Shown here: positions 1,851 through 47,733 of the stretch, in pieces
How the letters are laid out: each line of letters starts with the position of its first letter
How positions within the stretch are numbered: position 1 is the first letter of the stretch
Assembly: GCA_964199315.1 (NCBI GenBank)
Contig: OZ116704.1
Location: 8,618,001 to 8,682,000 of the forward strand
Origin: Orbicella franksi
Taxonomy: Eukaryota
Direction of reading: 5' to 3'
Length of the DNA stretch: 64,000 bases
Translations under genes and position numbers: made by a program
The notes under the pieces: generated by a model
The model's input: only the letters and a program-made list of their open reading frames with translations
Database searches by the model: none
Told to the model about the DNA's origin: nothing

Positions 1851-2331
1851 ATGTTTTCATGGAGGTACGGAGAGGGTCGTAAATAGAAACAGTTGAGAGA
1901 GAATTCGAAACAGCCACTCTTGTTTCCAAAGTTACCATAACTCGAAAATCAAAGACGCTGCATGTAACAATGTTTTCCCGACTTAGAAAGGATTACATAC
2001 GAACAAGAAGCTAAAAACTGGGCGGGTTAAAATTTTGGATGTTACGTGCATGTTAAAGGTTACTGCTTTTCCTCTCAAACAATAAAAGAATAAAGGTTGC
2101 ATACTTCACAATCCACTCCACAAAACGCACACCAAAATAGAAGTGGTTCTTAAGCTCGTTTCCCGTAAATTAATTAATCAAATATTTTCAGGCACAGAGG
2201 GAGACCCAAAAGATAATTGGTCATTTTTTCATTACTTTGCATTGCAGATTGCCAGACGATATCCTTTCATCTGGAGTCGAGGAAGCTATATCAACTCTTC
2301 AAGGAAAGACCGAGAGAGTGAACTTAGCATC

Positions 2332-5300
2332 ATGTCTTCTCGACGCCGTAGTACTGGCAGGAACTTGCCCGCAGACCCTCGGACCACAACGGTCATCAAA
2401 AATGAAGAAGCTGGCATTGCGTTGATAACGGCGACCAATCACGAGTGGGAAGAGGAATACCAAAGATTGCTTCTCGAGCACCGAGACTTGAAGGAAAACT
2501 ACGACAAAATGGAGAGCAAGTACCAAGAAATCCAGAAGGAAAATGTGAAAGTAACGAGGCATATGGAGCTCTCAATTGAGAAGTTCAACCGAGAAAAAGA
2601 CGGCCTCATTCGACAAAAAGAGGAGCTTAACATTCAAAATGAGAAACTGCGGAGCGATGTTCGCGAAAAGGGTGGCAAGATTGGCGACTTGCAAAAGGCT
2701 CTAGTGGAAAGCCAAAAGAAGGCCGATTCTCGCAAGGAGGAGCTGTTCACCAAAACCAAGCAACTAGAGAAGTTGGAAATTCTCATCAACGGTCTTCAGA
2801 ACCACACCATTCCAGAACTGAAACAGAAGCTCAACAAGTCTGAGGCTGACATGGAGATATTCAAGGAGAAAAGTAAACAGCTTAACGTGGATCTTGATAA
2901 AGCTGAAGAAAAGAATGATGAAGATCAACAGACCATTGAGAAACTACGCAAGGAGAAGAACGCACTTATCGAGAAGCTGGCTAGGGCCGAACGCGAGACG
3001 AGGGAGGCCGAAGACGCGCGCCATAAGGAAGAAGACAAGGTAGTCAACCTGCAAAACAAAGAAATATCGCTTCACGACAAGATCAGTCAGTTGGACGCGG
3101 AACTTCTCGCTGCGGAATCAAAGATAAGAGACTTGGAAAACGAGCTGAACAGGCGGCTGGCCGAACCAGTCGAAAAGAGTTACAACATCAATGTAGTGGA
3201 AAGTGAACCAGCACTTCAGTCAGCTCCACCTAGCTTTTCATTTGGAGATCACTACGACAAAGAGCAGTTCGAGATGCTGGAGAAAAAAGTAAAGGACCTG
3301 GCAGATAAGAACAAGCGATTTGAAGACGAGAACTTAGGCTTGAAGGGGAAACTCGATATGGCCAGTAAGGATATCAACAAGTGGGAGAAAAAGTATGAAG
3401 ACGAGAACAGGGAGAAGAGTAAGATTGCAGCTCTGCTTGAAAATGAAAAGGGGAATTATGGACGGCTCAAGAATGAGTACAACGAGCTGAAAAGCCAGCT
3501 GGCGAAGGCGGAGAGGACGATAGAGCATGATAAGAAGGAGATGGCTAGAAAGGACAGAATCATAGAAGAACTGAGGGCGAAAATTCTGCAGCTGGAGCAA
3601 GACGTAGAGGATCGAGAGGGCACCATTGCCAAGCTTGAAATGAAGCTAGAGCAGTTGGAGAAAGAAATGGAAAAGCTGCACGAGGCCACTTTGGAACATC
3701 AGAAAAAATATGGCGATCTTGATAGTGATTATAAAGTCAGTGAAAAAGAGAAAGAGTCCGTACAACGAGATCTCGACCAAGTATCCATAAAAATTGCTGA
3801 GTTGGAGAGTAAGTTGAGAGAATCTGAAGAAGAGAAAAACTACTTGCATAAGGAGAACGCAGATCTTCGACAGAAGCGGTTGCGCTTGGAAGATGACTTG
3901 GACACTATTAACAAAGATAAAACAGTGTTTGAGAATCAAGTCCAAGACTGGTCTGACCAAAGCAGCAAACACCGCAAGGTAGCCGACAATATGAAAAAGA
4001 AACTGGCTCAAGCTCAAGACGAGGCAGAGCAGTACAAGAAAGAACTGGCGCAGAACAACAACAAGATAGACGAGTTGAATAAGAAATTGTTCGACCTCAA
4101 CTCGCTTTATGATACGAGCCAGACAGACCTTTCAAGTGCCCAGGACAATAGCGCGTTCAAAGATGACGAAATAAAGCATTTGAATAAGAAGATTGACAAC
4201 AAAGAGAATGAAATTAGCAAGCTTGAAGCTCAGCTAGAGAAGACGACAAAAGAAAGGGACAATGCTGAGGTTGAACTTGCTGGTGTCCTGGAAAAACTTC
4301 AGCATATGGAACCAAAACGAACAACAAACGATGAAGTCTTCAAACCAGCCGAGGTGACCTATTCTTACCAGCAACCAGACTTGGAAACTGACCTAGCACC
4401 CCTCCGTCAGAGAATCTACGAACTTGACAATGAAAACAACAGGTTGAAAAAGATTGAAGAACATCTCCAAAGCGACATCAAAGACAGGTTAGTCCAAATC
4501 GCTGCACTGGACAGAGAGAATACTAAGGTCAAAGCAGAAAATGAAGACTGGGAGAGAAAAGCAAATGATATGAAGAGAAAAATACACGCCCTGGAGAAAG
4601 AGGAAGATGAACTTATGGACACCAATACCGACCTACGCGAAAGACTAGATGACCTGAGTCCAGAGGTTGACAAGCTGCAGAAAAAGGTAGAAACGTTAAC
4701 CCTTGAGCGCGACAGACTGAAGGAATATCTCAGCGAGTCGAACTTCAAATTCACCCAGAGCAAAGAAGATTACAACAAAAAGAGTCTGGATTTCTCGGAG
4801 CAGGTAAAAGTAAACAGCACGCTTGGGAAGACTGTTAAGAAGCACGAAGCTACAATGGAATCATTGACCCAAAAGTGCAAAATGCTGGAAGAAGAACTAG
4901 AAGATTTGAGACCGGAATTGAAAGCAGCATTGGCGAAAAATGAAACATTGGAGACCGAAAACAAAGAATTGGATTCTCGCAATAAAATACAAAAACGCAA
5001 GATAGACGACTTGCAAAAAGAACTACGAGAAGAGATCGAAGCAAAGGAGTTGCTGCAACAAGATGTCGACTCATTGGGCTACAAGTTGAACGTCGCAGAC
5101 GCAAACAACAAGGCACTAACCAAGCAAAGAAATGATTTGCAAAGTCAGATCGACGACCTGGAAAGCAAACTAAGGAAAATCAAGCCAGAGCTCGAACAAT
5201 GTCGAAACAAGCTTAAAGACAAAGATCGCATCATAAGTCGATTGCAATCAGATTTGAAAGACAAGGATTCGCAGCTTACCGCAGCCAAACGAAAGATCAA

Positions 5301-8300
5301 TACTCTGGATGAGACATGCACCTCATTAAGAAAAGAGGCAGAGGCTCATAAGAGTGCAAGTGAAATTAACCGAAATCGCGTAAAGGAGCTTCAAATTCAG
5401 CTTCAGGAGATGGGTAACAGCATGCAGACAGCCGTGGCGAACGTCTCCGTCGTTCATTCAGCACCACCACAAAGCTTCAGAGAAGAAAGGCTCCGCAGTA
5501 CACCTGACGAAAGGATTCACGACTTGGAGACACTGCTGAAGAAGAGCGAGGCTCGTGAAGATCAGTTAAGGGATCAGCTGCAACGCCTTGAGAACCGTCT
5601 TCCTATAGCAGAGAAGGACGCTAAAAAAGCTCAAGACAAAATAAGCGAGCTTCAACCTAGTGTAACCAATCTACAAAGGAAACTGGAGGACCTAAGAAAA
5701 GTGTTAGACAGAAGCAACCGTGAAAAAGAAGATGCCAAAAAAGAGTTGATGGAGGCTCAAACACAACTGACAGTTTTGAAAACAAAAGGCGAGGCGGACG
5801 CGAATGAAATCTCATCCTTGAAAAGTCAGTTAGAACAAGCCAACCGACGTCTCGCAGAGAATCATGAAAAACTGCTAGCTATTGACGAGGAACATGTGCA
5901 TCTTCGCTTGCTTGCAGATGGTCATAATAAAGACAAGGACGACCTCAAGACAGCGTATGAGAGATTGCAAATAAAAAAGAACGAACTGGAAAACACGGTG
6001 GAAATAAAGGAGTCCAATTTGAAATCAAGCCAACATGCTTGCGACACGTTAAGAGAGGAGAAGATTAAGGCACAACAGGAGCTTAACGAACTTCGGCGGA
6101 CAACTTTAGTTGACTTAAAGAGAAACCTTACCCGCATGCAAGGTGAGCGAGATCGTGCTTTGGAAGACGGCAGGATGGCTATGTCGAAAATAGAAGATCT
6201 TGAAAATCAGTTGGCAGAGGCCATGACGAAACGAAAAGAACTAGAAAGGGACAACGACGACCTCGAAGCTGAGATACGCCAACTGAAGAACGAAATTGAA
6301 ACGAATCGTAAAAAGATTGAGGACCTGGAGGATAAAATAGAAGTATTAAACCTTGAACTCGAGAGAGACGAGAAAGATATAGATTCTTTGAAGGAAGAAA
6401 AAATCAAGCTCGAAGATGAGTGTGCAGACCTCCAAGTTAAACTGGCAGAGAAGCAGGATGTTATTAACATTGCTCCGATGCAAGTCGCCAATGTAGAAAC
6501 AACCTACGCAGCCGCCCCCGGGTTTGATTTCGGTTCAGATCCAGACGCTTTAAGGGATCTTGAAGATGAAAATATGGATCTAAAAGAGAAGCTACAAAGA
6601 GGTGAAATGGAATACGACGTTCTGCGAGAGCAACTAAATGACTACAAGAACAAGCTGGGAGACTCGGAGGGCAAGTGCCAGCGTCTTGAGACAAACCTTA
6701 AAGACAAAGACAATCGCCTGCAGGAGCTTGAAAAGACGTTGCCAGAGGCTGTGGAGGAGCTAAATTTGGTAACTGATAAATATCATTCAGCGGAACGCGA
6801 ACTAGAGCTCTTAAAGGATGAGTTACAAGACGCACAGACCAAGTTAAGTTCTGCTGAAGCACAACAAGCTGCTGGATTTGCCAAACTCAGAACACTGCAG
6901 CAACAACTAGAAGCTGCCCAGAAGGACTTGCTTGACAAGAATGACGATGTTATCGAAAAACAACGTAAAATCAACGAGCTCTACGCTATTCTGGAGAGCG
7001 GAGGCAAGGACTCAGATCGCTTGAAGCAAGTTATTGAGGAGTTGAGAGAAGATGTTGACCTTAAAGACAGAGAGAACGCAAAACTACAGAAGGATATTCG
7101 CATCACTCAAGAAAACCTCGCTAAACTTCAAGCAGCCTTGGAGGACATGGAAGGCAGGTTAAATGACACAGAGAATGAGCGAGAAGAATACAAAATGAAA
7201 GCCGATGGTTTAGAGGTAGAGATCGAAATGCGCGATAAAGTACTGGAAGAGGCACAACATGAAGTAGACGAAACCAGGGACAAGTTGAAGGCAGCCAAGA
7301 AAGAGATTGACGCCCTTCGTAGTCAACTAAAAGAAGCAAATGTCAGCTTAAAGGCAGCCACTGATGAGAAGAGGATCCTTGAGAAACGAATTGCCGAACT
7401 GCAAGCAATAATTGAACAGCTGAGGAAAGAATTATCTGCTAAGAATACAGCGATTACTCCTAAATCTGGAACAAGCGATGCATATCTAAACGAACTTAGG
7501 AATAAACTTGCAGAGTACCGAACAAAATATCAGGAAGTTTGCAACGAAAAGATGAGACTAGAGCTGGAACTGCGAGAAAAAGATGTCAAGATTTCACAAG
7601 TTTCTGGTCCATCGGATACATTACGCGAAGAGCGAGACCGTCTTAAAGACGAAGTTATAAAACTGCAAGGCACTCTCAAAGAAACAAAGAAAAACTATCA
7701 AAAAGCTCAAAGGGATATAGAAGAACTACAACGTCGCTTGGTGTCAAAGGACAGCGAAATAAAGCGCTCGGAAGATAAAATTGCAAAACTAGAGGAGGAA
7801 AAAGAAAAAATGAAGAAAGACTACGCCAACTTGGAGAAAAAGAACTCGGATTTGAAAGTTGAATACGAGAAGCTCAAATACGAGAAGAACAAGGCAGAAA
7901 ATGAACTTTCTCTGCTAAAGAAGAAATTCCAGGCTCTGCAAAACCAGATCAACACAGTGGATGTGCCCAGGCAGAAGCAAGACGTTGTGAGCAGAAAGAA
8001 GTATCAAGAATTGGAGGCAAGTTGTCAGGATGCACTGCGTGAAAAGGAGAGGGCAAAGAGTGATATGGCTGCTTACCGAACTAAGATGGCAAGGTTGGAA
8101 GCCGAGATGAACGAACAGAAGAGAGAGAAAGACGTTTTGGAAGATGAAAAGCATCGTCTAAGGAACAGCGAAGCTGAGCTTAAAAACAAGCTCCAAACAT
8201 CGAGAGACAGACACAAGGAAGACAAAGACAAGATGCTGGAGTGGCGTAAAAACAATTTCTCACCCTTAGAGCAAGAACTTCAGAGAACCAAAGGACTCAT

Positions 8301-10917
8301 CAAAAAGCTCGAAAAGATGAACGCAGCCAAAGACCACGAAATTGGAGATTTGAAGGACGATCTTGCAGATCGTGATAGGAGAATTGCCGAGTTGGAGGAC
8401 GAACTGGAAAATCAGGATGTCACTGACGCTGGGCCACTAGACTCAGTTAACATAGACATCAGAGGAGACTCAGAAGCACTTCAACGGGCTCTGGATGAAA
8501 AAGCAGATGCGGTGAAAGAAGGTCAGAGGTTGAAAAGCAAATTGTGGACTATAGAGCACGACATGGAAATTCAGAAGACAAAAGAAGCTCAGCAAGAAAA
8601 AATGGTAGCTGAAGTGAATAACATGAACGACAAATTGAAGGACGAAATACGACAGCTAAAGAAAGGAACTTGGGACCAACAAGGGTCATACAACAAGCTC
8701 ATTAAAGAGAATAGCGAGCTCGCCTACCAAGTTAACACGTTGAAAGAAGACAAAGAAGACTTGGACAAAGACATTCAAGAACTCCGCGATGAGCTGAACG
8801 ACGTAAGAGGAGAAAATAGAAAATTAATGATAGAGAACAAAGACCTCAAGATGGACCTGCAGCAGTTAGAAATCAAGCTGCACGAATTGGAAATTGGACA
8901 CAAGCTTGCAAAGGACGACAACGAGAAAATCAGGAGTGATCTGTTACAGACTCAGAGCGAGAATGCAGATTTGAAGGACAGCTTGAACAGGCGTGATGAT
9001 GAAATGATCCAGGTGCAAGCAGTAGCTACAGTGGAAAGTGCCCCACCCATGATGTTCGAAGATGACGTGGATGGAATAAAACGGGACAAAGACAAACTGC
9101 AAATTGAGCTAGAGGCGGCGGAAGATCAGGTTAAAATGCTGCACGACGAACTTGACGACAAGCAGGCCAAAAATGACCAGATTCAAGTCGAGCTGACAGA
9201 AGCCAGAAGAAGACTCAAAGAAGACGAAGCAGACATCAAGAAGCTAGACGCTGAAATCGAAAATCTACGCCACGAGCTGGATCTAGCGAACCAAAACTGC
9301 GACGATCAACGAACCGAGAATCAAAATCTTTTGGAAGCAAAGGAAAATCTTCAGACAGAGGTGACCGATTTGCGTGCAGATGTGAAAGATATGGAGACAG
9401 AACTACAAAAACTAGCTAAGGTGAAAGCTGATTTGGAACGAGAGCTGAAGAGAGCCGGTCAAGCACCCATAGAAAGGCGACCTTCACGAGATCTTCACAA
9501 CGAAAAAGAAAAGAAGATCAGAGAACTGTCAGAAAAAGTCGTACAGTTGGAGCGGGATATACAGAAGGGTGGATACGAACTGACATCACTGAGAGAAGAG
9601 AATGATGACTTGCAAGAGAAGATAAATAGCCTAAGGGATGAGAACAACTTCCTCCATTCCAAGTTGTCCCAGCTTGAACATGATAACAGGAGAGATAATA
9701 ACAAGATCGTTGAACTCGAAAAAGAGAAGCAAGAACTGCAAGATATGTTAGACAACAGCAGTGGCGGAATCGATTCCGGGAGAGACAAAGACCTGACGAC
9801 AGAAGAGAACAAGACATTGTTAGAGAGAAACAAAAAGCTGCAAAATGATCTAGAACATCTCAAGCAGGAAAAAGCCAACATGAAGAGGCAACTGGATGAG
9901 TACAATAGGAGGTTAGATGATAACTCGAATCAGCTAGCCGTTCAGATTACGAAATTTGTTGGAGATCAGAGCGAGACATTCAGGAAAGACGCCCAGGAGA
10001 AAGACAACAAAATTGATAAGCTGCAGCAAGAGAAGTTGGAAGTAGAAAAGAAGTTAGAAAGTCTGACAGAGGAGTTGGATGCAGCACAATCTAATCTCAG
10101 CGACATTCAGAACCAAAATGAAATTCTTCAGGAGGACATAAAGACCTTAAAGGAGGACAAAGCCAAGCTGGATAACAAACTTATTGAAGAAATGAACTTC
10201 AGCAAGGTCAAGACCGCTGAGCTGGAGGCCGAACAGGATATTCTTAAGAACAAGATTAAGGACAAAGACGATCTTGTCAAAAAGTATGAAAAACAACTTC
10301 AGCAGCTCCGAGAACAGTTGGCCATGTCTGTTCCCAGCGACCAGGCCTCAACCACTTTGATACTGGATGTAGACAAGCGTCGGAAGCAGCGCCAGCACAG
10401 CCTGATGCTGTCCTACCAAGAGGGTTTGATGAACAGGCCAGGTGGACTGTACCGCTCGACAAGTGAAAGCAGTCTCCCCAACGGCGACATCTCCAGGTCA
10501 AGCGACAGCGGCAAAAGCGACTTAGAGCACTCTCAGATTGGCGAACTCCTCAGTAAAGAGATCCCGCAGAGTAGACGAAACAGGGACAGCGCACCCAGAG
10601 ACCACGTAGGTGAGACGGTTGAGGCTACCTCAAAGGTCACTACAGAGTCAGAGCCTGATTATGCCGCACAGTTACGCAGCAGCACGCCAGTCGACGATAA
10701 TGAAGATATAAAGAGCAGCAGGAGACCATCTGATAGAGATTCTGGAAGCCAACGTTATGGAGGTTACCGGGACAGTGACAGCACTCGAAGCAGAGTCAGT
10801 AGCGGTAGAGACAGAGACCGAGATTCAGACAGCATCAGAGGCCGTGAGTCAGACAGGGCTGACAGGCGTTCCGAACGTGGAAAGGACCGCAACAGATCTG
10901 AATGCCAGCAGAATTAG
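2332..10917 (+). CDS. Giant coiled-coil protein A (2861 aa from ATG 2332), coded within one exon; C-terminus CQQN
   Basis: Uninterrupted 8.6 kb ORF, E/K/L/D/Q-rich heptad-type sequence with rare Pro-containing breaks. Splice acceptor ttactttgcattgcag| at 2247/2248; ATG context agcatcATG matches B (agcaccATG). Colinear with paralogue B over its whole length, with many synonymous differences. No orthologue recognised. Confidence 0.9.
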   Translation: MSSRRRSTGRNLPADPRTTTVIKNEEAGIALITATNHEWEEEYQRLLLEHRDLKENYDKMESKYQEIQKENVKVTRHMELSIEKFNREKDGLIRQKEELNIQNEKLRSDVREKGGKIGDLQKALVESQKKADSRKEELFTKTKQLEKLEILINGLQNHTIPELKQKLNKSEADMEIFKEKSKQLNVDLDKAEEKNDEDQQTIEKLRKEKNALIEKLARAERETREAEDARHKEEDKVVNLQNKEISLHDKISQLDAELLAAESKIRDLENELNRRLAEPVEKSYNINVVESEPALQSAPPSFSFGDHYDKEQFEMLEKKVKDLADKNKRFEDENLGLKGKLDMASKDINKWEKKYEDENREKSKIAALLENEKGNYGRLKNEYNELKSQLAKAERTIEHDKKEMARKDRIIEELRAKILQLEQDVEDREGTIAKLEMKLEQLEKEMEKLHEATLEHQKKYGDLDSDYKVSEKEKESVQRDLDQVSIKIAELESKLRESEEEKNYLHKENADLRQKRLRLEDDLDTINKDKTVFENQVQDWSDQSSKHRKVADNMKKKLAQAQDEAEQYKKELAQNNNKIDELNKKLFDLNSLYDTSQTDLSSAQDNSAFKDDEIKHLNKKIDNKENEISKLEAQLEKTTKERDNAEVELAGVLEKLQHMEPKRTTNDEVFKPAEVTYSYQQPDLETDLAPLRQRIYELDNENNRLKKIEEHLQSDIKDRLVQIAALDRENTKVKAENEDWERKANDMKRKIHALEKEEDELMDTNTDLRERLDDLSPEVDKLQKKVETLTLERDRLKEYLSESNFKFTQSKEDYNKKSLDFSEQVKVNSTLGKTVKKHEATMESLTQKCKMLEEELEDLRPELKAALAKNETLETENKELDSRNKIQKRKIDDLQKELREEIEAKELLQQDVDSLGYKLNVADANNKALTKQRNDLQSQIDDLESKLRKIKPELEQCRNKLKDKDRIISRLQSDLKDKDSQLTAAKRKINTLDETCTSLRKEAEAHKSASEINRNRVKELQIQLQEMGNSMQTAVANVSVVHSAPPQSFREERLRSTPDERIHDLETLLKKSEAREDQLRDQLQRLENRLPIAEKDAKKAQDKISELQPSVTNLQRKLEDLRKVLDRSNREKEDAKKELMEAQTQLTVLKTKGEADANEISSLKSQLEQANRRLAENHEKLLAIDEEHVHLRLLADGHNKDKDDLKTAYERLQIKKNELENTVEIKESNLKSSQHACDTLREEKIKAQQELNELRRTTLVDLKRNLTRMQGERDRALEDGRMAMSKIEDLENQLAEAMTKRKELERDNDDLEAEIRQLKNEIETNRKKIEDLEDKIEVLNLELERDEKDIDSLKEEKIKLEDECADLQVKLAEKQDVINIAPMQVANVETTYAAAPGFDFGSDPDALRDLEDENMDLKEKLQRGEMEYDVLREQLNDYKNKLGDSEGKCQRLETNLKDKDNRLQELEKTLPEAVEELNLVTDKYHSAERELELLKDELQDAQTKLSSAEAQQAAGFAKLRTLQQQLEAAQKDLLDKNDDVIEKQRKINELYAILESGGKDSDRLKQVIEELREDVDLKDRENAKLQKDIRITQENLAKLQAALEDMEGRLNDTENEREEYKMKADGLEVEIEMRDKVLEEAQHEVDETRDKLKAAKKEIDALRSQLKEANVSLKAATDEKRILEKRIAELQAIIEQLRKELSAKNTAITPKSGTSDAYLNELRNKLAEYRTKYQEVCNEKMRLELELREKDVKISQVSGPSDTLREERDRLKDEVIKLQGTLKETKKNYQKAQRDIEELQRRLVSKDSEIKRSEDKIAKLEEEKEKMKKDYANLEKKNSDLKVEYEKLKYEKNKAENELSLLKKKFQALQNQINTVDVPRQKQDVVSRKKYQELEASCQDALREKERAKSDMAAYRTKMARLEAEMNEQKREKDVLEDEKHRLRNSEAELKNKLQTSRDRHKEDKDKMLEWRKNNFSPLEQELQRTKGLIKKLEKMNAAKDHEIGDLKDDLADRDRRIAELEDELENQDVTDAGPLDSVNIDIRGDSEALQRALDEKADAVKEGQRLKSKLWTIEHDMEIQKTKEAQQEKMVAEVNNMNDKLKDEIRQLKKGTWDQQGSYNKLIKENSELAYQVNTLKEDKEDLDKDIQELRDELNDVRGENRKLMIENKDLKMDLQQLEIKLHELEIGHKLAKDDNEKIRSDLLQTQSENADLKDSLNRRDDEMIQVQAVATVESAPPMMFEDDVDGIKRDKDKLQIELEAAEDQVKMLHDELDDKQAKNDQIQVELTEARRRLKEDEADIKKLDAEIENLRHELDLANQNCDDQRTENQNLLEAKENLQTEVTDLRADVKDMETELQKLAKVKADLERELKRAGQAPIERRPSRDLHNEKEKKIRELSEKVVQLERDIQKGGYELTSLREENDDLQEKINSLRDENNFLHSKLSQLEHDNRRDNNKIVELEKEKQELQDMLDNSSGGIDSGRDKDLTTEENKTLLERNKKLQNDLEHLKQEKANMKRQLDEYNRRLDDNSNQLAVQITKFVGDQSETFRKDAQEKDNKIDKLQQEKLEVEKKLESLTEELDAAQSNLSDIQNQNEILQEDIKTLKEDKAKLDNKLIEEMNFSKVKTAELEAEQDILKNKIKDKDDLVKKYEKQLQQLREQLAMSVPSDQASTTLILDVDKRRKQRQHSLMLSYQEGLMNRPGGLYRSTSESSLPNGDISRSSDSGKSDLEHSQIGELLSKEIPQSRRNRDSAPRDHVGETVEATSKVTTESEPDYAAQLRSSTPVDDNEDIKSSRRPSDRDSGSQRYGGYRDSDSTRSRVSSGRDRDRDSDSIRGRESDRADRRSERGKDRNRSECQQN

Positions 10918-22091: not shown

Positions 22092-22140
22092 ATATAAAGT
22101 ACTTTAAATTACAAGAACTGTACTACCGAGAAACTTCGTG

Positions 22141-38400: not shown

Positions 38401-41400
38401 TTTGCTGCCCTTCTTCAGAAGTCGTCATCTTTCTTTGGCAAACGTTGACGCTATTTTGGAGTTCCTGAATATGTTGTTGCGATGCATTCAGTTTTCCTTG
38501 CATTTCTGTAACAATCCTCTTCATGTTAAACACCTCTTTTTCCGCCTCATCTCGGTCCCTAGTTGCAGCAGTTAACAAACTTTGCGTGCTGATTAACTCC
38601 TGACTTAGCACGAAGATGTCTTTTTCTAGCTTTTGGTTCTCCTTCACCACGTGCTCTGTGGACGACTCTTTACCATCCAGGCCTTTGTGTTCCAATAGCA
38701 CGCGAGCCTCTTGGAGGGTTCGCTGCGTACTTAACAGTTCGTCGTCTCTGTTCTTCAGCGTTTCTATGTACTCTTGAACTTGTTGCTCCAGTTGCATTCG
38801 TGCATTTTGTGCATTGTTGATCTCCATTTCTAATTTTAATATCTTTTTTCGTGCCTCTTGTATTTCCGTATTAACAGTCTCCAATTTAACAACTGAATGA
38901 CGGTGGTCATCTTTCAACGGAGTGAATTCTTTTTGAAGCGCTATGAGGTCTTGCTCAATTTCGCTCTTTCTTGCTTGGATTACATCGTATTTCGATTCCC
39001 ATTGAGACTCTAAAGTCCGAGCAGCAAAAAGATTTTCTTGGAGCTCAGCTTCCTTCTCAAGAAATGCTCGGCTGCTTGCTTCCAACTCGACAATTTTTCT
39101 CCTTTGCATCATGACTTCTCTTTCTAGAGTTTCAATTTTTTCTTGAAAAACAGAATTTGCATTTTCACTAGCTTGAAGTCGTGGAAGAGATTTGCTTTGA
39201 AGTTCAAGGCTCTGATACCGTTCAGCCAACTCTTTGTATTCCACTTCTACCGTATGCAGCCTTTTCTTGAAAGAATCTGCCTCTATTTCTAAGTTTGTGT
39301 TCTTCGCTTGAAGCTCTCTAACCTCTCCCTCTTTCTTGATTGCATCGGTCTTAAGAATGTTGATGGTGCCTTCTAGATTAGCAATCTGCTGATCAGATGA
39401 CATGTGACTGTCTTGGTGCATCAAGGAACTGTTCTTCCATTCTTCCACTTTACCACATAGTGCTTGTTTCTCACGGTCCTGTTCCATTATTTGATGTTCA
39501 AACGACGCTAGTTTTGCCATAGCAGACTGGTACTCAGTTATGAGTCGGTCTCTTTCAATGGCCACTTTTTGAATTCGCGCTTCATAGTCAGCATTAGATG
39601 TTGTTAAGGATAAAATTTCCTGTTGTAATCGTTCTTTCTCGAGCTTCGTTCTTCCACAGTCTTCGCGAGATTCCGCTAGTGTGTGTCTCAGTGTTTCGAT
39701 GCTTTCCTCTAAGTAGAGTTTGCTAGCTCTTAATTGGTCCATCAAAAGCTCTTTCTCGTCCATCTCTTTCTTCATGGCGTCCGCCCCGATTCTTTGCTCT
39801 ATAAGCAGTTTGTCATTCTTCAAAAACTCATCATGGCTACTCGATACTCTTTGAAGAGCACTCTCAAGATGGCGTTTGACCGAATCCTTCTCGCGGATTT
39901 CATAATCATATTTTACCTCTAAGTCCGTCAATTTACCGTGTAAGGTTACCAGCTCCTCTTTGAGATTTTTCTTCTCTAGGTCGTACTTGTCAATAGCCAA
40001 CTCGTACTCCTGTATTTTAGTCTGAAGCGTTCCGTTTTCGCGGCTGTACTCCAGAGTTTCTTGATGTGCCGCTTTATTCTCCATCTCAAGTCGTTTAATC
40101 TTGTTTTTGTGGTCATCAATTTTTTGTCTGAGTGATCTTTCTCTGTCTTCACTTTGTTTGTACAGAGCTTCAACTTCCCAGATCTTCTCATAAGATGTCT
40201 TTTCCAGCTCTCCACTTTCATCATGGAAACTGCTTAACTCAAGCCTGGAGATGCTCGCGTTAGCTTCATCTAAGCTATCTTCGAGCTCTTTTGCTCTTGA
40301 CTGACTCCTTTCATAGTTAACTCCCAAGGAATCCAGGTCCTGTTGCAAAGCTGTCACCTCCGTTTCCAAGGCCACCTTGTCGTTAATCGCCTTTTCCAAC
40401 GCGATATCTTTTTCTTTTAACTCCAAACTCAGACTTTCGCAAGCTCTGTTCTTTTCCTGAACCTGATTTTGACACACTTTTAATTCTTTTTTCATCTGCG
40501 TAATGCCTGTTTGGGAACTTTCCCATTGCGTTTTGTATTCATCCTTATCAAAATGAAGGCTCGACACTTGGGCCTCAAGGCTGACAATCTTAAACTTAGA
40601 AGTACTTAACTCTTGTTCCAACTTCATGACAGAGTCTCTAAGAGCAAACACTTCTTGCTCACGCTGTTCCAGTTTCTCTTTGTATGAGGTCAACCTTCCT
40701 TCGTATTCACTTTTCTCTGCACGCAATCCCTCAGTTGTAACCTTAAAGGACATCAGCTCGCTTTTTGCCTTCTCTAATTCAGCCTCTGCAGATCTGATCT
40801 TCATATGAAGTTCTTCCACTAGTTGATCTTTCCTGAGGATTGCTTTGTTGACAGTCTCGTTTATCTTCTTTTCTTCGGTAACTTGACTTTCCAGTCGCAT
40901 AATGTTCTCCTTGTCATAAATAAGTTTTGTGTTGATCTCATCTAGCTGGTCTTTAAGCTGTGTCCTTTGATCTTGCATGGTCTCGATTTGTGATTCATAC
41001 TTCGCGATTCGAGTACGCATTATGTGGAGTTCCTCTTCTGCTTTTTCTTTCACCTGCCTGCAAGCCAATACCTCCTGTTCAAGCTCCGAGTTTCTCTTCT
41101 CTAGAATGATCAGCTTTTGCATTCGTTCTTCCTTGTTTGCAACTGCTTCCTCTAGCTCTTGTTTCAAAATTGACATTTTATTTTCTGTTTCTTCTAATTC
41201 ATCGAGAGCACCTTGTATATCGTTCTTCGTGAGTGCTGATATGGACTCCAGCGAACTGACTTTGCTCTTGTATGACGCAAGTTCTCTGGCTAGCTCACTC
41301 GATCTTGAACGCTCGTGATCTAGTTCTCTAGCCTTCTCAGCGGCCACAGACCTCTTGAAACTAGAATCCATGTTAGCAATCTTTTTCTGTGCTGCAAGAT

Positions 41401-43102
41401 AGTCTGCTTCAAGCTGCTGCTTGCGTTTCAGCGTCGTTTCATACAAGCCTTGCGCTCGAGAATGTTCTTCCTGCTTGACCATAAGTTGGTTGTGTAGCAT
41501 TTTCTTCTCCTTTTCACCCATTTCGCGCATACCCTTCACATTTGTCAGCTCTTCTCGACAAGCATCGAAGTCAACGTTTAACACGTTCAGTTTTTCGTGA
41601 AGTTGTTGTAACGATGCCTCCCTTTCTGCTATTTCCTTACGTAGCTCGTCGTTTACGCGCTGTTGCTCCATGAGCTGCGTTTTAAGTAAAGTAGCTTCTT
41701 GGCTGACAGCACTGTAAGTAGCAGAATATTCTTGCATTCTAACTTCGTAGGTAGAACGTTGATTGACGGCTTCTTCGAGCTCAGCCTCCAGCTTTGTGAC
41801 TTGTTGCTGTAGTGCCATGGTTTGGTGTTGAAAATCGTATTTCTCATGCTCGCATGCGTTATAGGACGCTTGTAGCTCCGACAACCTCTTGTAAAACGAC
41901 TGCATTTCAAGGTTTAGTTTCTCGTTTTCTTCTGAGTTCTGTCTGTTATCGGCAGTTATGTCTCGAATTCTCTTGTGTGCATCTAACGTCTCTTCTTGCA
42001 GTGCTCGTTTTTCTTCCTCAATGATCTCCATCTGAGCTTGAAGCTTGCTAACTTCACTGAACAAGGACTCAGTCTTGAGTTCGTAAGCAGTCATTGATGC
42101 TCTGAGATCCTCGATGATCTCATCCTTTTTATCGGACGCCTTTCTGCTTGACTCTGAGTTCCTCTGAGACTCTTCATAACGGCTCTGTGCCTTTGCCAGC
42201 TCTCTTTTCAGTCTTGTGACGTTTGATCGTTCCTCTTCTAGCTCCGCTTTAAAATTCGTCTTCTGCTTTGATGCACTCTCAATTTGACCCTCGTACTTGA
42301 ACATTTGGCTTTTCATAGCCGCCAACTTCTGTTCAACCTCGTTACTAGCATCCTCAGTCTTCTGCAAAAGAGATTTTGTTTCTGCAATCCTTCGCTCGGA
42401 TAACGTGAGTTCCTCTCTTACATCATCTCTTTCGCGTATTGCCGTTTCATAGCTGGACTCCAGTTGACTAATTCTAATTAAGGATTCCTCGAGTTTAACA
42501 GTAAGATGTTCGATTTCATCTTTGGCTTGAACGTAAGTGGGCTGCAACTGCGAGAATCTTCTTCCTTGGGCAAACATATCCGATTCCAGTCCAGCGATGT
42601 TATCGCGCAATCTAGAGTTTTCCATGTCCAGTTCTGCAACTTTGTCCAAGCTTTTCCTGTTAGCGTCTTCCATGGTTGTCAGTTTGCTTGACATGGCAGA
42701 TAACTCTCTTTGAAGATCGTCTCTTTCGGCTTTTATTGACTGAAGACTTGTGTCTAACTCGGCGATCTTTACTTGTGACAGGTTCATTTCTGTTTCTACA
42801 ACTTTACTCTGGGTTGCATGTAGTTCCATGGATATTCTCTGCTTAGACAGTTGCTCTTTTAGATCTTCAACCCGTGACACGAGGTCCTTATTGGCCGTTT
42901 CTAACTTTTCAACTTGGCGCGTTTTAGCAACGAGTTCTCCTTTGGAGTCCTCAGCTTGTTTCTGTATCTCAAGGACCTCCCTCTGCAGCAGAGACTGAGT
43001 TTCTTTGTTTTTGCGGAGTTCGTCGCGTGATTCACCGAGCTGTATCTTAAAGTTTTCTCTTTGCTTACTTGCGTTTTGAAGCTGCATCTCCAGTTTAGAA
43101 AC
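35453..43102 (-). CDS. Giant coiled-coil protein C, terminal exon (7650 nt, phase 0)
   Basis: Uninterrupted heptad-type ORF. Acceptor ttttcataacacag|GTT at 43103/43102; stop at 35453-35455. Confidence 0.88.
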   Translation of the reverse strand, partial: VSKLEMQLQNASKQRENFKIQLGESRDELRKNKETQSLLQREVLEIQKQAEDSKGELVAKTRQVEKLETANKDLVSRVEDLKEQLSKQRISMELHATQSKVVETEMNLSQVKIAELDTSLQSIKAERDDLQRELSAMSSKLTTMEDANRKSLDKVAELDMENSRLRDNIAGLESDMFAQGRRFSQLQPTYVQAKDEIEHLTVKLEESLIRISQLESSYETAIRERDDVREELTLSERRIAETKSLLQKTEDASNEVEQKLAAMKSQMFKYEGQIESASKQKTNFKAELEEERSNVTRLKRELAKAQSRYEESQRNSESSRKASDKKDEIIEDLRASMTAYELKTESLFSEVSKLQAQMEIIEEEKRALQEETLDAHKRIRDITADNRQNSEENEKLNLEMQSFYKRLSELQASYNACEHEKYDFQHQTMALQQQVTKLEAELEEAVNQRSTYEVRMQEYSATYSAVSQEATLLKTQLMEQQRVNDELRKEIAEREASLQQLHEKLNVLNVDFDACREELTNVKGMREMGEKEKKMLHNQLMVKQEEHSRAQGLYETTLKRKQQLEADYLAAQKKIANMDSSFKRSVAAEKARELDHERSRSSELARELASYKSKVSSLESISALTKNDIQGALDELEETENKMSILKQELEEAVANKEERMQKLIILEKRNSELEQEVLACRQVKEKAEEELHIMRTRIAKYESQIETMQDQRTQLKDQLDEINTKLIYDKENIMRLESQVTEEKKINETVNKAILRKDQLVEELHMKIRSAEAELEKAKSELMSFKVTTEGLRAEKSEYEGRLTSYKEKLEQREQEVFALRDSVMKLEQELSTSKFKIVSLEAQVSSLHFDKDEYKTQWESSQTGITQMKKELKVCQNQVQEKNRACESLSLELKEKDIALEKAINDKVALETEVTALQQDLDSLGVNYERSQSRAKELEDSLDEANASISRLELSSFHDESGELEKTSYEKIWEVEALYKQSEDRERSLRQKIDDHKNKIKRLEMENKAAHQETLEYSRENGTLQTKIQEYELAIDKYDLEKKNLKEELVTLHGKLTDLEVKYDYEIREKDSVKRHLESALQRVSSSHDEFLKNDKLLIEQRIGADAMKKEMDEKELLMDQLRASKLYLEESIETLRHTLAESREDCGRTKLEKERLQQEILSLTTSNADYEARIQKVAIERDRLITEYQSAMAKLASFEHQIMEQDREKQALCGKVEEWKNSSLMHQDSHMSSDQQIANLEGTINILKTDAIKKEGEVRELQAKNTNLEIEADSFKKRLHTVEVEYKELAERYQSLELQSKSLPRLQASENANSVFQEKIETLEREVMMQRRKIVELEASSRAFLEKEAELQENLFAARTLESQWESKYDVIQARKSEIEQDLIALQKEFTPLKDDHRHSVVKLETVNTEIQEARKKILKLEMEINNAQNARMQLEQQVQEYIETLKNRDDELLSTQRTLQEARVLLEHKGLDGKESSTEHVVKENQKLEKDIFVLSQELISTQSLLTAATRDRDEAEKEVFNMKRIVTEMQGKLNASQQHIQELQNSVNVCQRKMTTSEEGQQKAIIEQVTLRSQLDEANKRMVYSKEEFFEKQRELFSLRALVENYKKELAKNDSWQKEQSTKIKLLEDELRSSKLRIACGSDDYNNVSQELARLKLQLDEKDKCILVTEENIKKLLEENNKLRLELSDSQALESMHKQNLNDSKHKADFLQEEIMSLRQKMSYLEAQNSTKEEELRDSKKELLALKRSNFGIKSKYESLQRQTRELREELAMAKAKQSIVQHDESTVLTEKTFGRIEESVSRHQSSFIWKNEEHVREISQLEEKVLDLESKLSEARRQQEKLECEVIWRTRRIEDLEGRILKNTKQQDYSDGNNLQLNVETLQQELNASKNTIMRLEEYRDSCEKNIEVTEEKLRLAEQKALQMESAYLSSQESCDFVHKKFLETQKRLSVIETSPQRRESLDDVLKGLLRQEDEVKRLIDEARRSNGNLREELEKTERTRKESEVMLAENKATNSLQMDRLKTELSQFRDDYQRIYKEKQNLSADFQKLELQISCWEKSYHDIKQENGDLHFQLSVLQQRFSQLQETTGIVKQESRYVSSADVTPQSSEMQQLKEDKGKLNGEVASLNILLSSYKEKLDSLHSEKLQLHVKLEESKKKMFSLAQTNSTLIAEKSRLEQQVSIANKVSDVGLKELDREKETAKMFELRIDLEKVSKERDYLQHMLDGLQKQFLDYNLNDGIHTSLEIDSRIDSYRREIDEKNVMIDNLRTETVQLQAGIESTKKELAEKSFLSERQSFQVEEFKKEADSLRAVLAENVKENGTLKLRLNDICKERDFLVKNKCSLEYDLSVSRRKMSEAQNLAMTGNSRKDQELSIVQSKYAKLENDFKEVKQQNETMKLEMELQIKTELWSKQECIYELEKEARKLKAENDYHERVMEEKNTNLSKLRLQIASSQKEIGKLEKELFVTKEAYEKSERRMREIFKCEHELLTIEDLRSLVSSSPVLSVRSLSVAEHSFTGRRVTEDHSLSLSSIHPSFKSQLK

Positions 43103-44081: not shown

Positions 44082-44570
44082 CTTAATGCTGTAATTTTTG
44101 CTGCAGTTCACTAGCTCCCTCTGTGACTTTTCGCACTCTGCTTGTATCCCAGCCAGTTTATCTTGTAGCTCCATCAAGTCGTTCTGGATAACTTCCTTCT
44201 CCTGGACTAGGCAGTTATAACTCTCTTCCCAATTGGCTGCCTCTTGTTTTGCTGCAAGTAGCTGCTCATTATCCTCCACCGTACTTCTGTGGAGAAGTGC
44301 TGTCGTACTGGACGACAGCTCCCGCTGTAAATTGGCAAATTCCCGCTCCAGTTCGTCCTTTTCCTTTTGTAGGACATTGGTGACGTTTTTACATGAAGTC
44401 ACTTCTCGCTCTAAGGTTTCTTTCTCCCAGTCTCTCTCTGCTAGGGCGTGTTTAATCGTAACTAGTTCTTCTTGGTATTTTCTGCATTCGTTTTTTGACT
44501 CACTCAACTGATCATCTAACGCTTCCCTCGCCTTCTGAAGACTCTCTATTCTGGTCTGAAGTTGGTTAAC
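44082..44570 (-). CDS. Gene C exon 2 (489 nt, 163 codons, phase 0/0)
   Basis: Acceptor aattttatccag|GTT at 44571/44570, donor AAG|gtttgt at 44082/44081. Coiled-coil peptide VNQLQ...NYSIK joins in frame to VSKLEMQ. Confidence 0.8.
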
Positions 44571-45698: not shown

Positions 45699-45924
45699 AA
45701 CAATTATTCACCGAAGTGTAGGTGAATGGTGGTGGATATTTACCGAGCCGCGAAGCGGCCAGGTAAATATCCACCACTTTCACCGACACTGAGGTGAATA
45801 ATTGTTTTAGTATATACCACACGAGCTGAATAACTAGCGGACCAAAGAGTAACTTTATTTGTGTCAATATGCCGACAAATGGTCAGACAAAAAAATTGGC
45901 GCGCCGTGCGATGCTCGGAGGTGG

Positions 45925-45960
<36 letters not shown>

Positions 45961-46003
45961 AACGTGCGCGAAAAGTACTATTCACTTGTGTGGTATATAC
46001 TAA
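45699..46003. repeat. Composite hairpin repeat (two adjacent palindromic modules)
   Basis: 45699-45806: aacaattattcacc...gtggatatttacc...ggtaaatatccac...ggtgaataattgtt. 45807-46003: ttagtatataccacac...gtgtggtatatactaa. Confidence 0.8.
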
Positions 46004-47541
46004 CTTAAAATATTTATGCTTTACTGTTAATATTTCGGACACTTAGAAATTACTAATCGGACGCTCAAAAATTTCGGACGGTTTAATTTGGCCGAAATTT
46101 TTGCAAGTAATGTATCCGGTAGTAATATGGCCACTGCGTGCACATGCAGGGACCCTCGCGCCATTTCAATTTCGCCCTGATTAAAACCGATTAGTGAAAG
46201 TTGCAAATTGCATAGTATGTATCTGCATAGTTAGTGGAGGGGACTAACTATGGTACCTGGTTCAAGTTTATTGATGATACTATACTATAGAACACTATAG
46301 TAATAGTTTTTTTTACACGCTTGAGATAAACACACCAAAAGCCCACGTTTTGGTTGACTTGGATACGTGTTTGCCCAAAAGGCATCACCGAAGTTTTTGT
46401 ACATGCCTAACATTAATATCTTTTCAGAGACCCAACATCAAATCAACTTTCCTACACGTTTAAAACTTAATTATTTTCATGCAAACGTGGGGTCACTAAT
46501 TCAGTCTCTGGGGACTCAACCTCTTTTATGTTTTCTGCGCCATTTTATAACTGCTGTCACGGTTTTCATTTGCTTTTCCGTAATTCAGTTTCACAGCGAA
46601 CAAGTGAAGATTTAAAAGGGCGTATGTTCCTCGCTTCCTTGAAAGTGCTTAAAGGACGTTTCAGTGTTTGGAAAATGAACTACAGGTCCTAATAACTTTA
46701 TGAATTAATAAGGAGTAATGGCGGACACAAGAAGAAAAAACAATGGTGCTATAATGAAAGATTGCACGTATTGTAATTGAACTAAGTACAGTTTAATAAA
46801 ATGCAAATTGAACTTTCCACTAGCGCAAGGCGAAGCGAAGGTTATACGACAATTAAAATTCACGTCATGAAGACAAGCTCAATATCAATTTGTACTTTGT
46901 CCAAGTTATTTACTGATGTGTTGCAATGCCTCTTATTTCTTACAGTTAGACTTGCGGCTCTCAGTTTCAAAGGGTTTCGTGTATATAGATAATTAGACCA
47001 CATTAAATCTGTGATAAAAGACCGTGCCCCAGGGAATATGGAGTAAAAATTGAAAGAATTGATAGAATAGGTGAAAAGTGTTATATCGTCACAAATCTTA
47101 CTGGGTATAAGTCCTATCAACATTGAATGAGGTCAGAAGGAAAGGAAAAATCGTTCACATCCTTAAGATTTAAATACACGAAACGTGGTGCTCCCAAAAT
47201 TTTTTGAGTGTTGCTTTACCCTGCCAATTGATCTACAAGGCCCCAGACGTGATCAGGCAGAAGCGAACCACATTGGTCAGGAACAAACAACTATTTCAAA
47301 GAGGACTGGGCACTGGGCAATTTGACCGGCTATGAGGACGAGGATTTTGCCCGCCTGGTTTGACCATCTGAAAGAAAGGTTTCTCATAAAAAATTTCAGT
47401 TTAAAACGTTTTGCCTGCCTGTGAAAAGCAGTTGCCTTCCTGCAGAAAAAGTTAATGAAAACCCAGTTACAGCCTAGGAAGTTGTGGCTTAAAGACACAG
47501 TTTTCGACCTCAGGCAATAAAAGAATAGAAAATGTACTTAC

Positions 47542-47733
47542 CTGGGCTGCATGTTCCGTTTTGACTATCTCCAGCTCGTGTTTAAACGTCCGATAAGCTG
47601 CTTCCAAATCACCAAACGTTTCCTTTGCCGAGGCGAGATGCTGCAGTGTCGCATCCGCAGCTCCAACCGACCGCTCGATCGAGTTGGAGAAGCTTGTTTC
47701 TTCTAGAGATTCCACCCGGGACAAACGAGACAT
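47542..47733 (-). CDS. Gene C first coding exon (64 codons)
   Basis: aaagATG at 47733 with an in-frame TAG three codons upstream. MSRLSRVESLEE...TEHAAQ, then a perfect donor CAG|gtaagt at 47542/47541, phase 0, joining exon 2 in frame. Membership in gene C is inferred from strand, phase and position. Confidence 0.7.

What the first reader, a model, noticed from the sequence alone, without database searches (positions are those of the whole stretch)
2248..47733. Cluster of three ~2,800-aa all-coiled-coil genes, each built on a 7.6-8.7 kb exon
Seen: about 25 kb of coding sequence in 45 kb, giving proteins of 2861, 2815 and ~2776 aa with no globular domain I can recognise. A and B are colinear tandem paralogues. 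C is not alignable with them by eye yet has nearly the same length and faces B tail-to-tail. Established: a coiled coil rises ~0.15 nm per residue, so each rod could approach 400 nm. Inference: a lineage-specific set of length-matched structural fibres or tethers (ciliary rootlet, cnidocyte, sperm or muscle scaffold), possibly co-assembling. Automated pipelines would probably mislabel them myosin-, golgin- or CENP-F-like.
Basis: partly seen in the sequence, partly recalled or inferred. Interest (0 to 1): 0.75.

Follow-up and report, generated by a model that had tools for sequence, protein, structure and literature searches.

The report
Giant coiled-coil gene family in corals
The three huge coral genes are real and encode rod-shaped proteins about 0.4 micrometres long; they are three of at least eight related genes, a family named so far only in stony corals and sea anemones, whose cellular job is unknown.

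Summary
A (2332-10917, 2861 aa), B (22500-30947, 2815 aa) and C (three exons, 2776 aa) are intact genes under purifying selection (dN/dS 0.21-0.29). B is well represented in polyA RNA libraries.

Two corrections:
- C is not unrelated to A and B. It aligns colinearly with them over about 2,200 residues, so it is a distant paralogue.
- The trio is part of a family of at least eight colinear paralogues. Six lie within 150 kb, a seventh 250 kb away, and an eighth on another chromosome. The similar lengths are therefore inherited from a common ~2,700-residue rod.

No Pfam domain passes threshold and there is no transmembrane segment. B's N-terminus is modelled as one long helix, and a 391-residue piece as a parallel in-register dimer.

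Canonical rootletin and CENP-F_N genes lie elsewhere in this genome. An exhaustive profile search found relatives that are named only from stony corals and a sea anemone. Everything weaker was taxonomically random coiled-coil noise.

New features:
- An ancient 52-heptad (364 aa) internal super-repeat.
- A 14-residue charge period, strong in C and nearly lost in A and B.
- A/B-specific hinges and an invariant Cys at position -4 that fits published farnesylation rules.

Function is untested. The scan earlier noted another giant coiled-coil family on other DNA of this genome (s1-236671).

The parts
2332..10917 (+). Gene A: single-exon CDS, 2861 aa plus stop; rod of about 2,640 residues and a 190-residue disordered Ser/Arg/Asp-rich tail
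   Evidence: ORF. 66% identical to B. Orthologues P0007 (Desmophyllum pertusum) and P0008 share the same start and end.
22500..30947 (+). Gene B: single-exon CDS, 2815 aa plus stop
   Evidence: ORF. Orthologues of 2811-2819 aa at 83-90% identity. dN/dS 0.26 against the orthologue in L025. 14 RNA runs, polyA libraries included, hold 0.64-0.84 of its 31-letter words.
35453..43102 (-). Gene C, giant exon 3 (7650 nt including the stop)
   Evidence: ORF. Acceptor site ...ACACAG|GT at 43102. Orthologue gene models of 2613-2644 aa start at the Met at 43087. 32% identical to G6 over 2313 aa.
44082..44570 (-). Gene C, exon 2 (163 codons)
   Evidence: tblastn with the N-termini of G6, G1, G2, H1 and D; best is G6 at 36% identity, E 5e-35. 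Canonical AG and GT splice sites. Also found by the own-genome search.
47542..47733 (-). Gene C, exon 1 (64 codons, begins with Met, ends CAG|GTAAGT)
   Evidence: Homologous small first exons lie upstream of G6 (52% identity, E 1e-12), G1 and G2. It belongs to the only open GT-AG gene model.
23328..23426 (+). B residues 277-309: first non-helical hinge, specific to the A/B lineage (motif ...YNITVVQS...SAxP...) and also present in the sea-anemone homologue
   Evidence: AF2 pLDDT is 32-57 here, between helices with pLDDT above 90. Alignment A2. The other paralogues are helical at this position.
29175..29258 (+). B residues 2226-2253: break in the rod shared by the whole family (...TVESAPPMMF...). 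The matching break in A is at 9007-9084.
   Evidence: Low heptad score. The aligned break is present in G1, G2, G6, H1 and C.
10903..10914 (+). A C-terminus Cys-Gln-Gln-Asn, preceded by GKDRNR
   Evidence: The Cys at -4 is kept in both A-type orthologues (CQQN, CQQS). The motif has no residue that the published yeast farnesyltransferase rules forbid (PMC10320760).
30933..30944 (+). B C-terminus Cys-Lys-Gln-Asn, preceded by GKDRNR
   Evidence: CKQN is identical in the five B-type orthologue models P0001-P0005. The sixth model, P0006 (Oculina), ends earlier and lacks the motif. [quoted passage not shown]

Best explanation
A, B and C are three expressed members of an ancient family of giant coiled-coil proteins with at least eight members, so far named only in hexacorals (stony corals and sea anemones).

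Shown or modelled:
- Each protein is almost entirely one alpha-helical rod of 2,400-2,700 residues.
- The rod is modelled as a parallel, in-register homodimer, giving a fibre of about 370-400 nm.
- The rod arose by internal duplication of a unit of about 52 heptads (364 aa, about 54 nm).
- In most members, C included, the rod carries a 14-residue charge period that could guide regular side-by-side packing.
- The paralogues differ mainly in their short non-helical tails.

Inferred: the tails decide where each rod is anchored or what it binds.

A and B are a derived sub-lineage:
- They have lost the 5' intron.
- They gained four flexible hinges about 350-390 residues apart.
- They have largely lost the charge period.
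- They end in a basic stretch plus Cys-x-Gln-Asn, which probably receives a farnesyl group. That would tie one end of a segmented 0.4-micrometre tether to a membrane or a partner protein.

I read the family as long-range cytoskeletal tethers or fibre formers, working like rootletin/C-Nap1, golgins or the farnesylated CENP-E/F-type fibres. Which cell structure they serve is not known.
For: Real, constrained genes:
- ORFs of 7.6-8.6 kb are open, with dN/dS 0.21-0.29.
- Orthologue lengths are tightly kept: B-type 2811-2819, C-type 2613-2644, D-type 2472-2509 aa.
- The B-then-C tail-to-tail order is kept in a relative (L025).
- Run X3 (polyA) holds 0.84 of B's words but only 0.14 of a mostly intronic stretch.

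Family:
- Eight paralogues align in single alignments of 2,000-2,900 aa at 150-1290 bits. An unrelated coiled coil (H2) gives 43-48 bits.
- The tree places the Actinostola (sea anemone) protein outside A+B, and a Montipora protein inside the D clade.

Rod:
- No Pfam hit passes its cut-off and no TM-like segment exists (maximum Kyte-Doolittle 19-residue mean 1.04).
- AF2 models B residues 23-276 as one helix with pLDDT above 90.
- ESMFold2 homodimer of B 300-690: ipSAE 0.36 against a best control of 0.00. That mark was reached by 21 of 30 solved one-chain pairs and 0 of 23 single chains. The runs agree in at least 87% of contacts and partner pLDDT is at least 74. The dimer is parallel and in register, with a/d-spaced contacts from 311 to 557.

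Super-repeat and charge period:
- Internal matches fall at offsets of 364, 434 and about 350 aa, scoring 50-80 bits. Controls score at most 42 bits.
- The 14-residue charge period gives p 2e-6 in C, 7.5e-14 in G6, 0.013 in A, 0.12 in B and 0.82 in the control.

Tail: the Cys at -4 is invariant in the seven A- and B-type orthologue models that reach the C-terminus and fits published FTase rules.
Against: - No localisation, cell-type or interaction data exist.
- RNA laid on C's 5' part showed no splice joints. PolyA raw reads (about 12% of each run read) gave no reads on C's exons there. Expression of A and C is therefore not shown, and C's exon joins rest on homology and splice consensus only.
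- The dimer model is a prediction. Coiled coils are easy passes and may be scored from memory.
- Farnesylation with Asn at the X position is inferred from yeast rules, not shown for a cnidarian enzyme.
- The taxonomic range rests on the few hits that carry names. Octocorals and medusozoans could not be searched by name.
Confidence: 0.6

Rival explanations
1. The family provides ciliary-rootlet or centrosome-linker fibres. On this reading the members are extra rootletin/C-Nap1-like proteins that build the very long striated rootlets of anthozoan ciliated and sensory cells.
For: Language-model features place B nearest to CEP135, rootletin, ODF2 and CEP89/SCLT1 clusters. The 52-heptad (about 54 nm) super-repeat and the regular charge period would suit a striated fibre.
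Against: The atlas recognition scores (1897 and 1618) fall below the level at which such hits are reliable. No Rootletin domain is present in A, B or C. The canonical rootletin gene lies on another chromosome (C3:34.66 Mb). No expression or localisation data are available.
Confidence: 0.15
2. A and B are mitotic or kinetochore fibrous-corona proteins of the CENP-E/CENP-F/Spindly type. These are giant farnesylated coiled coils recruited through their C-terminal lipid.
For: The conserved C-terminal Cys-x-Gln-x after a basic stretch resembles polar CaaX boxes. There are weak CENP-F_leu_zip hits at the same position in A, B and their orthologues (21-29 bits). CENP-F also has giant exons (from my own knowledge, not tested here).
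Against: The leucine-zipper hits are below the 34.5-bit cut-off. No CENP-F_N or Rb-binding domain is present. Two loci with CENP-F_N matches above the cut-off lie elsewhere (C8:8.89 Mb and C11:2.99 Mb). Six of the eight paralogues lack the Cys. No kinesin motor lies in the ORFs, and orthologue models start at the same Met.
Confidence: 0.08
3. The family members are golgin-like membrane tethers. The long rods would be anchored by their C-termini to Golgi or vesicle membranes and would capture cargo with the N-terminus.
For: The likely lipid anchor at the A/B C-terminus, the hinged rod in A and B, the variable tails between paralogues, and a nearest unnamed atlas cluster labelled GCC2 fragment.
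Against: There is no GRIP, GRAB or TM anchor. Only A and B have the Cys. The atlas hit is generic. Nothing shows membrane association.
Confidence: 0.1
4. The family members are thick-filament or myoneme core proteins of muscle, acting like paramyosin or myosin rods.
For: Sub-threshold Tropomyosin hits, one family fragment labelled 'myosin-6-like' by a pipeline, and a regular charge period in most members.
Against: No member has the 28-residue or 28/3 period that defines myosin and paramyosin rods (p 0.8-1.0 at period 28). There is no Myosin_tail hit. The rods are 2-3 times longer than myosin rods.
Confidence: 0.05

Closest known systems
Rootletin (CROCC) and C-Nap1 (CEP250)
   Same: Paralogous proteins of about 2,000-2,400 aa that are almost entirely parallel coiled coil and form long fibres or linkers. 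The atlas feature search lists rootletin among the nearest clusters.
   Different: The Rootletin N-terminal domain (PF15035) is absent from A, B and C. This genome's own rootletin gene lies on C3. No sequence similarity rises above coiled-coil background.
CENP-F, CENP-E and Spindly (farnesylated mitotic coiled-coil proteins)
   Same: Giant coiled coils ending in a polar Cys-x-x-x box. A and B give weak CENP-F_leu_zip hits.
   Different: The hits are below cut-off. There is no CENP-F_N domain, no Rb-binding domain and no kinesin motor. CENP-F_N matches lie elsewhere in the genome. The X residue is Asn, not Gln.
Giantin (GOLGB1) and other golgins
   Same: Rods of about 3,000 aa with hinges, anchored at the C-terminus.
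   Different: There is no transmembrane anchor and no GRIP domain. The possible anchor here is a lipid, present only in A and B.
Myosin II and paramyosin rods
   Same: Parallel dimeric coiled coils whose periodic charges drive staggered packing.
   Different: The period here is 14 residues, not 28 or 28/3. The super-repeat is 364 residues. There is no motor and no Myosin_tail match.
The other giant coiled-coil family noted by this scan in the same genome (s1-236671)
   Same: An unstudied family of giant, largely single-exon coiled-coil genes, clustered on one chromosome and named only in stony corals and sea anemones.
   Different: That note reports five members on another piece of the genome, one of them an 8,123-codon exon. 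None of my eight members has that size (the largest open frame is 4720 codons). My searches did not link the two families.

Membership tests
Rootletin / CROCC | Rootletin N-terminal domain (Pfam PF15035) | tested here: not met
   There is no hit in A, B or C at E up to 0.01. The domain is found above cut-off only at C3:34657883-34660098.
CENP-F | CENP-F_N domain (PF10481), with leucine-zipper repeats above cut-off | tested here: not met
   CENP-F_N is absent from A, B and C and present at C8:8.89 Mb and C11:2.99 Mb. CENP-F_leu_zip scores 21-29 bits against a cut-off of 34.5.
Golgins (giantin-type or GRIP-type) | C-terminal transmembrane anchor or GRIP domain | tested here: not met
   The maximum Kyte-Doolittle 19-residue mean is 0.75-1.04, with none at the C-terminus. 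No Pfam hit lies in the C-terminal 150-200 residues.
Myosin II / paramyosin rod | 28-residue (and 28/3) charge periodicity; Myosin_tail_1 profile | tested here: not met
   Summed power at period 28 gives p 0.8-1.0 in all eight members. No Myosin_tail hit.
Parallel dimeric coiled coil (general class) | Heptad pattern, near absence of Pro and Gly, and an in-register a/d interface | tested here: met
   Heptad scores exceed shuffled controls. B has 17 Pro and C's giant-exon ORF has 7. AF2 models a single helix. The homodimer model scores 0.36 against a best control of 0.00, with a/d contacts from 311 to 557. These are predictions, not measurements.
CaaX-type prenylated proteins (A and B only) | Cys at position -4; no D/E/K/R at a2; no K/P/R at X | tested here: met
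   CQQN, CKQN and CQQS are conserved in the seven orthologue models that reach the C-terminus. The rules come from PMC10320760. CKQQ is prenylated by yeast and human FTase (PMC11152559).
CaaX-type prenylated proteins (A and B only) | Actual attachment of an isoprenoid | not testable with these tools
   This needs labelling with a farnesyl analogue or mass spectrometry.
The hexacoral giant-rod family defined here | Colinear alignment over at least 2,000 residues with the other members, far above coiled-coil background | tested here: met
   A, B and C each align with G1, G2, G6, D and H1 at 150-970 bits. The unrelated coiled coil H2 gives 43-48 bits. Position-specific conserved blocks are visible in the alignment.

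The most novel reading that the evidence does not exclude
The eight rods form a hexacoral-specific cytoskeletal system. They would act as molecular rulers or tethers of fixed length (about 0.4 micrometre), built from a 54-nm super-repeat. The charge-periodic members (C, G6, H1, G1, D) would bundle into a striated fibre. The hinged, lipid-anchored pair A and B would connect that fibre to a membrane, for example in a cnidarian-specific structure such as the cnidocyte or spirocyte apparatus or the ciliary cone.
Probability: 0.15. Interest if true: 0.7.

Novelty: new variant of a known kind. Interest (0 to 1): 0.45.

Why it matters
Long coiled-coil rods set distances and build fibres in cells; rootlets, centrosome linkers, golgins and the kinetochore corona are examples. 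This family has at least eight members and no described relative. Its rod length has been kept since before stony corals and sea anemones diverged. It also shows a clear internal 52-heptad unit and, in one sub-lineage, a likely lipid anchor. The family offers a defined set of candidates for unexplained fibrous structures of anthozoan cells. It also shows that current annotation (hypothetical, 'LRR-containing', 'myosin-like', 'cingulin-like') hides the family. Practical value stays limited until a cell type or localisation is known.

Tried and rejected
- Pfam on the whole proteins, their termini and C's small exons gave only sub-threshold coiled-coil families.
- PDB sequence search with B gave no hit.
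- Two ESM Atlas searches gave generic coiled-coil clusters with recognition below the reliable level.
- A third word-indexed protein search, with G6, added nothing.
- Literature searches found no paper on such a family. The terms tried were: coral giant coiled coil single exon; Nematostella cnidocyte rootlet coiled-coil; DDB_G0290503 with coral; anthozoa striated rootlet.
- RNA laid on C's 5' region was inconclusive. Random-primed metatranscriptome contigs cover exons and introns alike at depth 3-9, and no splice joint was seen. The polyA raw-read runs gave no reads on C's exons there.
- A whole-rod BLOSUM autocorrelation gave no clear peak at an offset of 364. The super-repeat shows only in piecewise BLAST.
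- Rejected: LC8 'TQT' motif in B's N-terminus. It is not conserved among orthologues.
- Rejected: Homer-type PPxxF reading of the SAPPxxF hinges. I had no way to test it, and the motif is specific to A and B.
- Rejected: a hidden upstream motor or globular domain for A and B. Orthologue models begin at the same Met. The one longer model, P0003, adds only an unconserved extension.
Full report
**1. Observation**

The window is G000:C7:8618001-8682000 of a stony-coral genome. The ORF list shows three giant open frames: 2143-10917(+), 22500-30947(+) and 35453-43144(-).

- A, from its first Met, is 2332-10917 (2861 aa). B is 22500-30947 (2815 aa).
- For C, I enumerated every GT-AG combination near the homology-defined boundaries. 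Only one gives an open frame: 47733-47542 / 44570-44082 / 43102-35453, which is 2776 aa.
- C's exon 2 is 36% identical to the N-terminus of paralogue G6 (E 5e-35).
- C's exon 1 has homologues just upstream of the giant exons of G6 (52% identity, E 1e-12), G1 and G2.
- Total coding sequence is about 25.4 kb within 45 kb.

**2. Real genes under constraint**

- dN/dS is 0.26 for B against its orthologue in locus L025. It is 0.29 for the 3' part of C against its orthologue, and 0.21 for A against B.
- Orthologue lengths are tightly kept. B-type models are 2811-2819 aa, C-type giant-exon models 2613-2644 aa, and D-type 2472-2509 aa.
- In a relative's 722-kb contig, the B orthologue is again followed tail to tail by the C orthologue.
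- B's exon is held at 0.64-0.84 of sampled 31-letter words in 14 RNA runs from more than ten studies, polyA libraries included.
- Run X3 holds 0.84 of B but only 0.14 of the mostly intronic stretch 42800-46800. This argues against mere DNA carry-over.
- Expression of A and C was not shown. The one read-laying run, on C's 5' part, gave low-depth contigs over exons and introns alike and no splice joints. The polyA raw-read runs gave no reads on C's exons.

**3. C is a paralogue, and the family is larger than three**

- B and C align in one alignment of 2183 residues at 23% identity (E 5e-81).
- Searching the whole genome with a relative of C found further giant open frames:

| Member | Location | Open frame (codons) |
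|---|---|---|
| G1 | C7:8545195-8553471(-) | 2759 |
| G2 | C7:8569383-8580485(+) | 3701 |
| G6 | C7:8685015-8694344(+), 3 kb past the window end | 3110 |
| D | C7:8939172-8946596(-) | 2494 open frame (2475 aa from Met) |
| H1 | C8:4630703-4644862(-) | 4720 |

- All pairs among the eight align colinearly over 2,000-2,900 residues at 23-33% identity and 150-1290 bits (A and B at 66%).
- H2, an unrelated 2574-codon coiled-coil ORF next to H1, served as an internal control. It gives only 43-48 bits over 190-365 residues.
- C is closest to G6 (32% identity).
- C with G6, and G1 with G2, are divergently oriented pairs.
- The similar lengths of A, B and C are thus inherited from a common rod of about 2,700 residues.

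**4. Range and relation to known families**

- No Pfam family passes its cut-off in any member or in the termini. The PDB sequence search found nothing.
- The genome encodes a canonical Rootletin domain on C3. CENP-F_N matches lie on C8 and C11.
- An exhaustive HMMER profile search used eight aligned rod halves (alignment A1) against 1.84 billion representatives. It gave full-length colinear hits only to proteins that BLAST assigns to one of my paralogue types.
- The named family members are from Oculina, Desmophyllum, Pocillopora, Montipora and the sea anemone Actinostola.
- The named hits checked below about 240 bits come from a fish, fungi, an alga, Giardia and bacteria (including a phage tail protein). 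That is coiled-coil noise.
- In a maximum-likelihood tree, the Actinostola protein branches outside A+B, and Montipora falls inside the D clade. The main lineages therefore predate the split of sea anemones from stony corals. The A/B duplication is younger (quick method, long-branch caveats apply).
- The names that sources give to family members are 'hypothetical protein', 'putative LRR-containing protein DDB_G0290503', 'myosin-6-like' and 'cingulin-like'.

**5. Anatomy of the rods**

- Proline is almost absent: 40 in A (mostly in the tail), 17 in B and 7 in C's giant-exon ORF.
- A simple heptad scorer lies far above shuffled sequence along the whole rods.
- No transmembrane-like segment exists.
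- AlphaFold2 with an orthologue alignment models B 23-276 as one helix (pLDDT above 90). Residues 1-22 and 277-309 are disordered, so there is no globular head.
- ESMFold2 folded two copies of B 300-690 as a parallel, in-register pair with a/d-spaced contacts from 311 to 557.
  - The score was 0.36 against a best control of 0.00.
  - That mark was reached by 21 of 30 solved one-chain pairs and 0 of 23 single chains.
  - The runs agree in at least 87% of contacts, and partner pLDDT is at least 74.
  - This supports dimerisation but does not prove it.
- At 0.148 nm per residue (established value), rods of 2,500-2,650 helical residues are about 370-390 nm long.

**6. Hidden order**

- 300-residue pieces of G6 match G6 again at an offset of exactly 364 residues (52 heptads; 64-80 bits). 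Further matches fall at offsets 431, 1590 and 2399.
- A matches itself at offsets 369 and 347-353. C matches itself at 434, which is 62 heptads.
- The same pieces score at most 35-42 bits against H2 or against the reversed sequence. The rod therefore grew by ancient internal duplication.
- Net charge has a 14-residue period, summed over 350-residue pieces:

| Member | p at period 14 |
|---|---|
| G6 | 7.5e-14 |
| H1 | 4e-10 |
| C | 2e-6 |
| G1 | 4.5e-5 |
| D | 2e-4 |
| A | 0.013 |
| G2 | 0.014 |
| B | 0.12 |
| H2 (control) | 0.82 |

- No member shows the 28-residue period of myosin rods.

**7. A and B are a derived branch**

- They lack the 5' intron.
- They carry four extra non-helical hinges at about residues 290, 677, 1043 and 1394. 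These are 350-390 residues apart, at super-repeat boundaries. Their motifs are of the type V-x-V-V-x-S-A-P-P-x-x-F.
- The other paralogues are helical at those positions.
- The first hinge is already present in the sea-anemone homologue.
- One break, at A 2226-2251 and B 2226-2253, is shared by the whole family.
- Their tails end in GKDRNR-x-x-Cys-(Gln/Lys)-Gln-(Asn/Ser). The Cys is invariant in the seven orthologue models that reach the C-terminus, while the rest of the tail drifts. The Oculina model (P0006) ends earlier.
- Published screens show that yeast FTase is limited mainly by D/E/K/R at a2 and K/P/R at X (PMC10320760). [quoted passage not shown] The motif is therefore a plausible farnesylation signal, but this is untested.
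- C and the other five paralogues have different tails without this Cys.

**8. Interpretation**

Shown:
- Real, constrained genes, with B transcribed.
- A family of at least eight members, named only in hexacorals.
- No known domain.
- Not rootletin or CENP-F by their defining domains.

Modelled:
- A parallel dimeric rod.

Inferred:
- The rods act as long tethers or fibre formers whose variable tails set their attachment.
- A and B are hinged and lipid-anchored.
- C-type members pack through periodic charges.

C differs from A and B in exactly the features that would govern assembly. I therefore see no positive evidence for A/B/C co-assembly. The cellular structure served remains open, and the rivals are listed with their tests.

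The scan earlier reported another giant coiled-coil family elsewhere in this genome (s1-236671). My searches did not connect it with this one.

Noticed in passing
G000:C7:8545195-8553471(-), 8569383-8580485(+), 8685015-8694344(+), 8939172-8946596(-); C8:4630703-4644862(-): Five further giant paralogues lie outside the window: G1, G2, G6, D and H1, with open frames of 2494-4720 codons. G1/G2 and C/G6 are divergently oriented pairs. The small first exons of G1 and G2 are only about 4 kb apart, which may mean a shared promoter region.
   Followed up: partly
G000:C8:4622001-4626587(-) (locus L018): A 2574-codon coiled-coil open frame (H2) lies directly next to H1. It is unrelated to the family (43-48 bits) and has no paralogue in this genome at E 1e-10. 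Orthologue-like proteins of 2500-2700 aa exist (P0081 at 63% identity).
   Followed up: partly
window 52146-53525 (-): A 460-aa ORF has strong LRR_6 repeats (E 3.5e-33), the ribonuclease-inhibitor / NLR-type leucine-rich repeat. It sits between C and G6.
   Followed up: no
window 45344-45711: A short repeat inside C's intron 1 has very high depth in RNA assemblies (up to about 2,300 against 3-9 around it), with many loose ends. It is probably a transcribed interspersed repeat.
   Followed up: no
window 10903-10921 and 11041-11059: The last 15 coding bases of A (TGCCAGCAGAATTAG) plus the four bases that follow (GTAC) recur exactly 138 bases downstream. I only confirmed that the duplicate exists.
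   Followed up: partly
window 43108: One RNA-library contig carries a 2-base insertion (TA) here. The site lies just upstream of the predicted acceptor at 43102, which fits this stretch being intron rather than coding.
   Followed up: no
P0045 / P0190 (XP_058971170.1, Pocillopora verrucosa 'cingulin-like'): A large cluster (328 member sequences) of short proteins of 450-530 aa is 49% identical to the first 475 residues of C's giant exon. These may be a truncated paralogue, a short isoform or fragmentary gene models.
   Followed up: no
H1 C-terminus (C8, last ~170 codons of the 4720-codon frame); A residues 2674-2682, B 2677-2685: Short Thr-rich, strand-like motifs of the type T-T-L-(D/I/V)-I-D-V recur four times in H1's tail and once at the end of the A and B rods. 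Their meaning is unknown.
   Followed up: no
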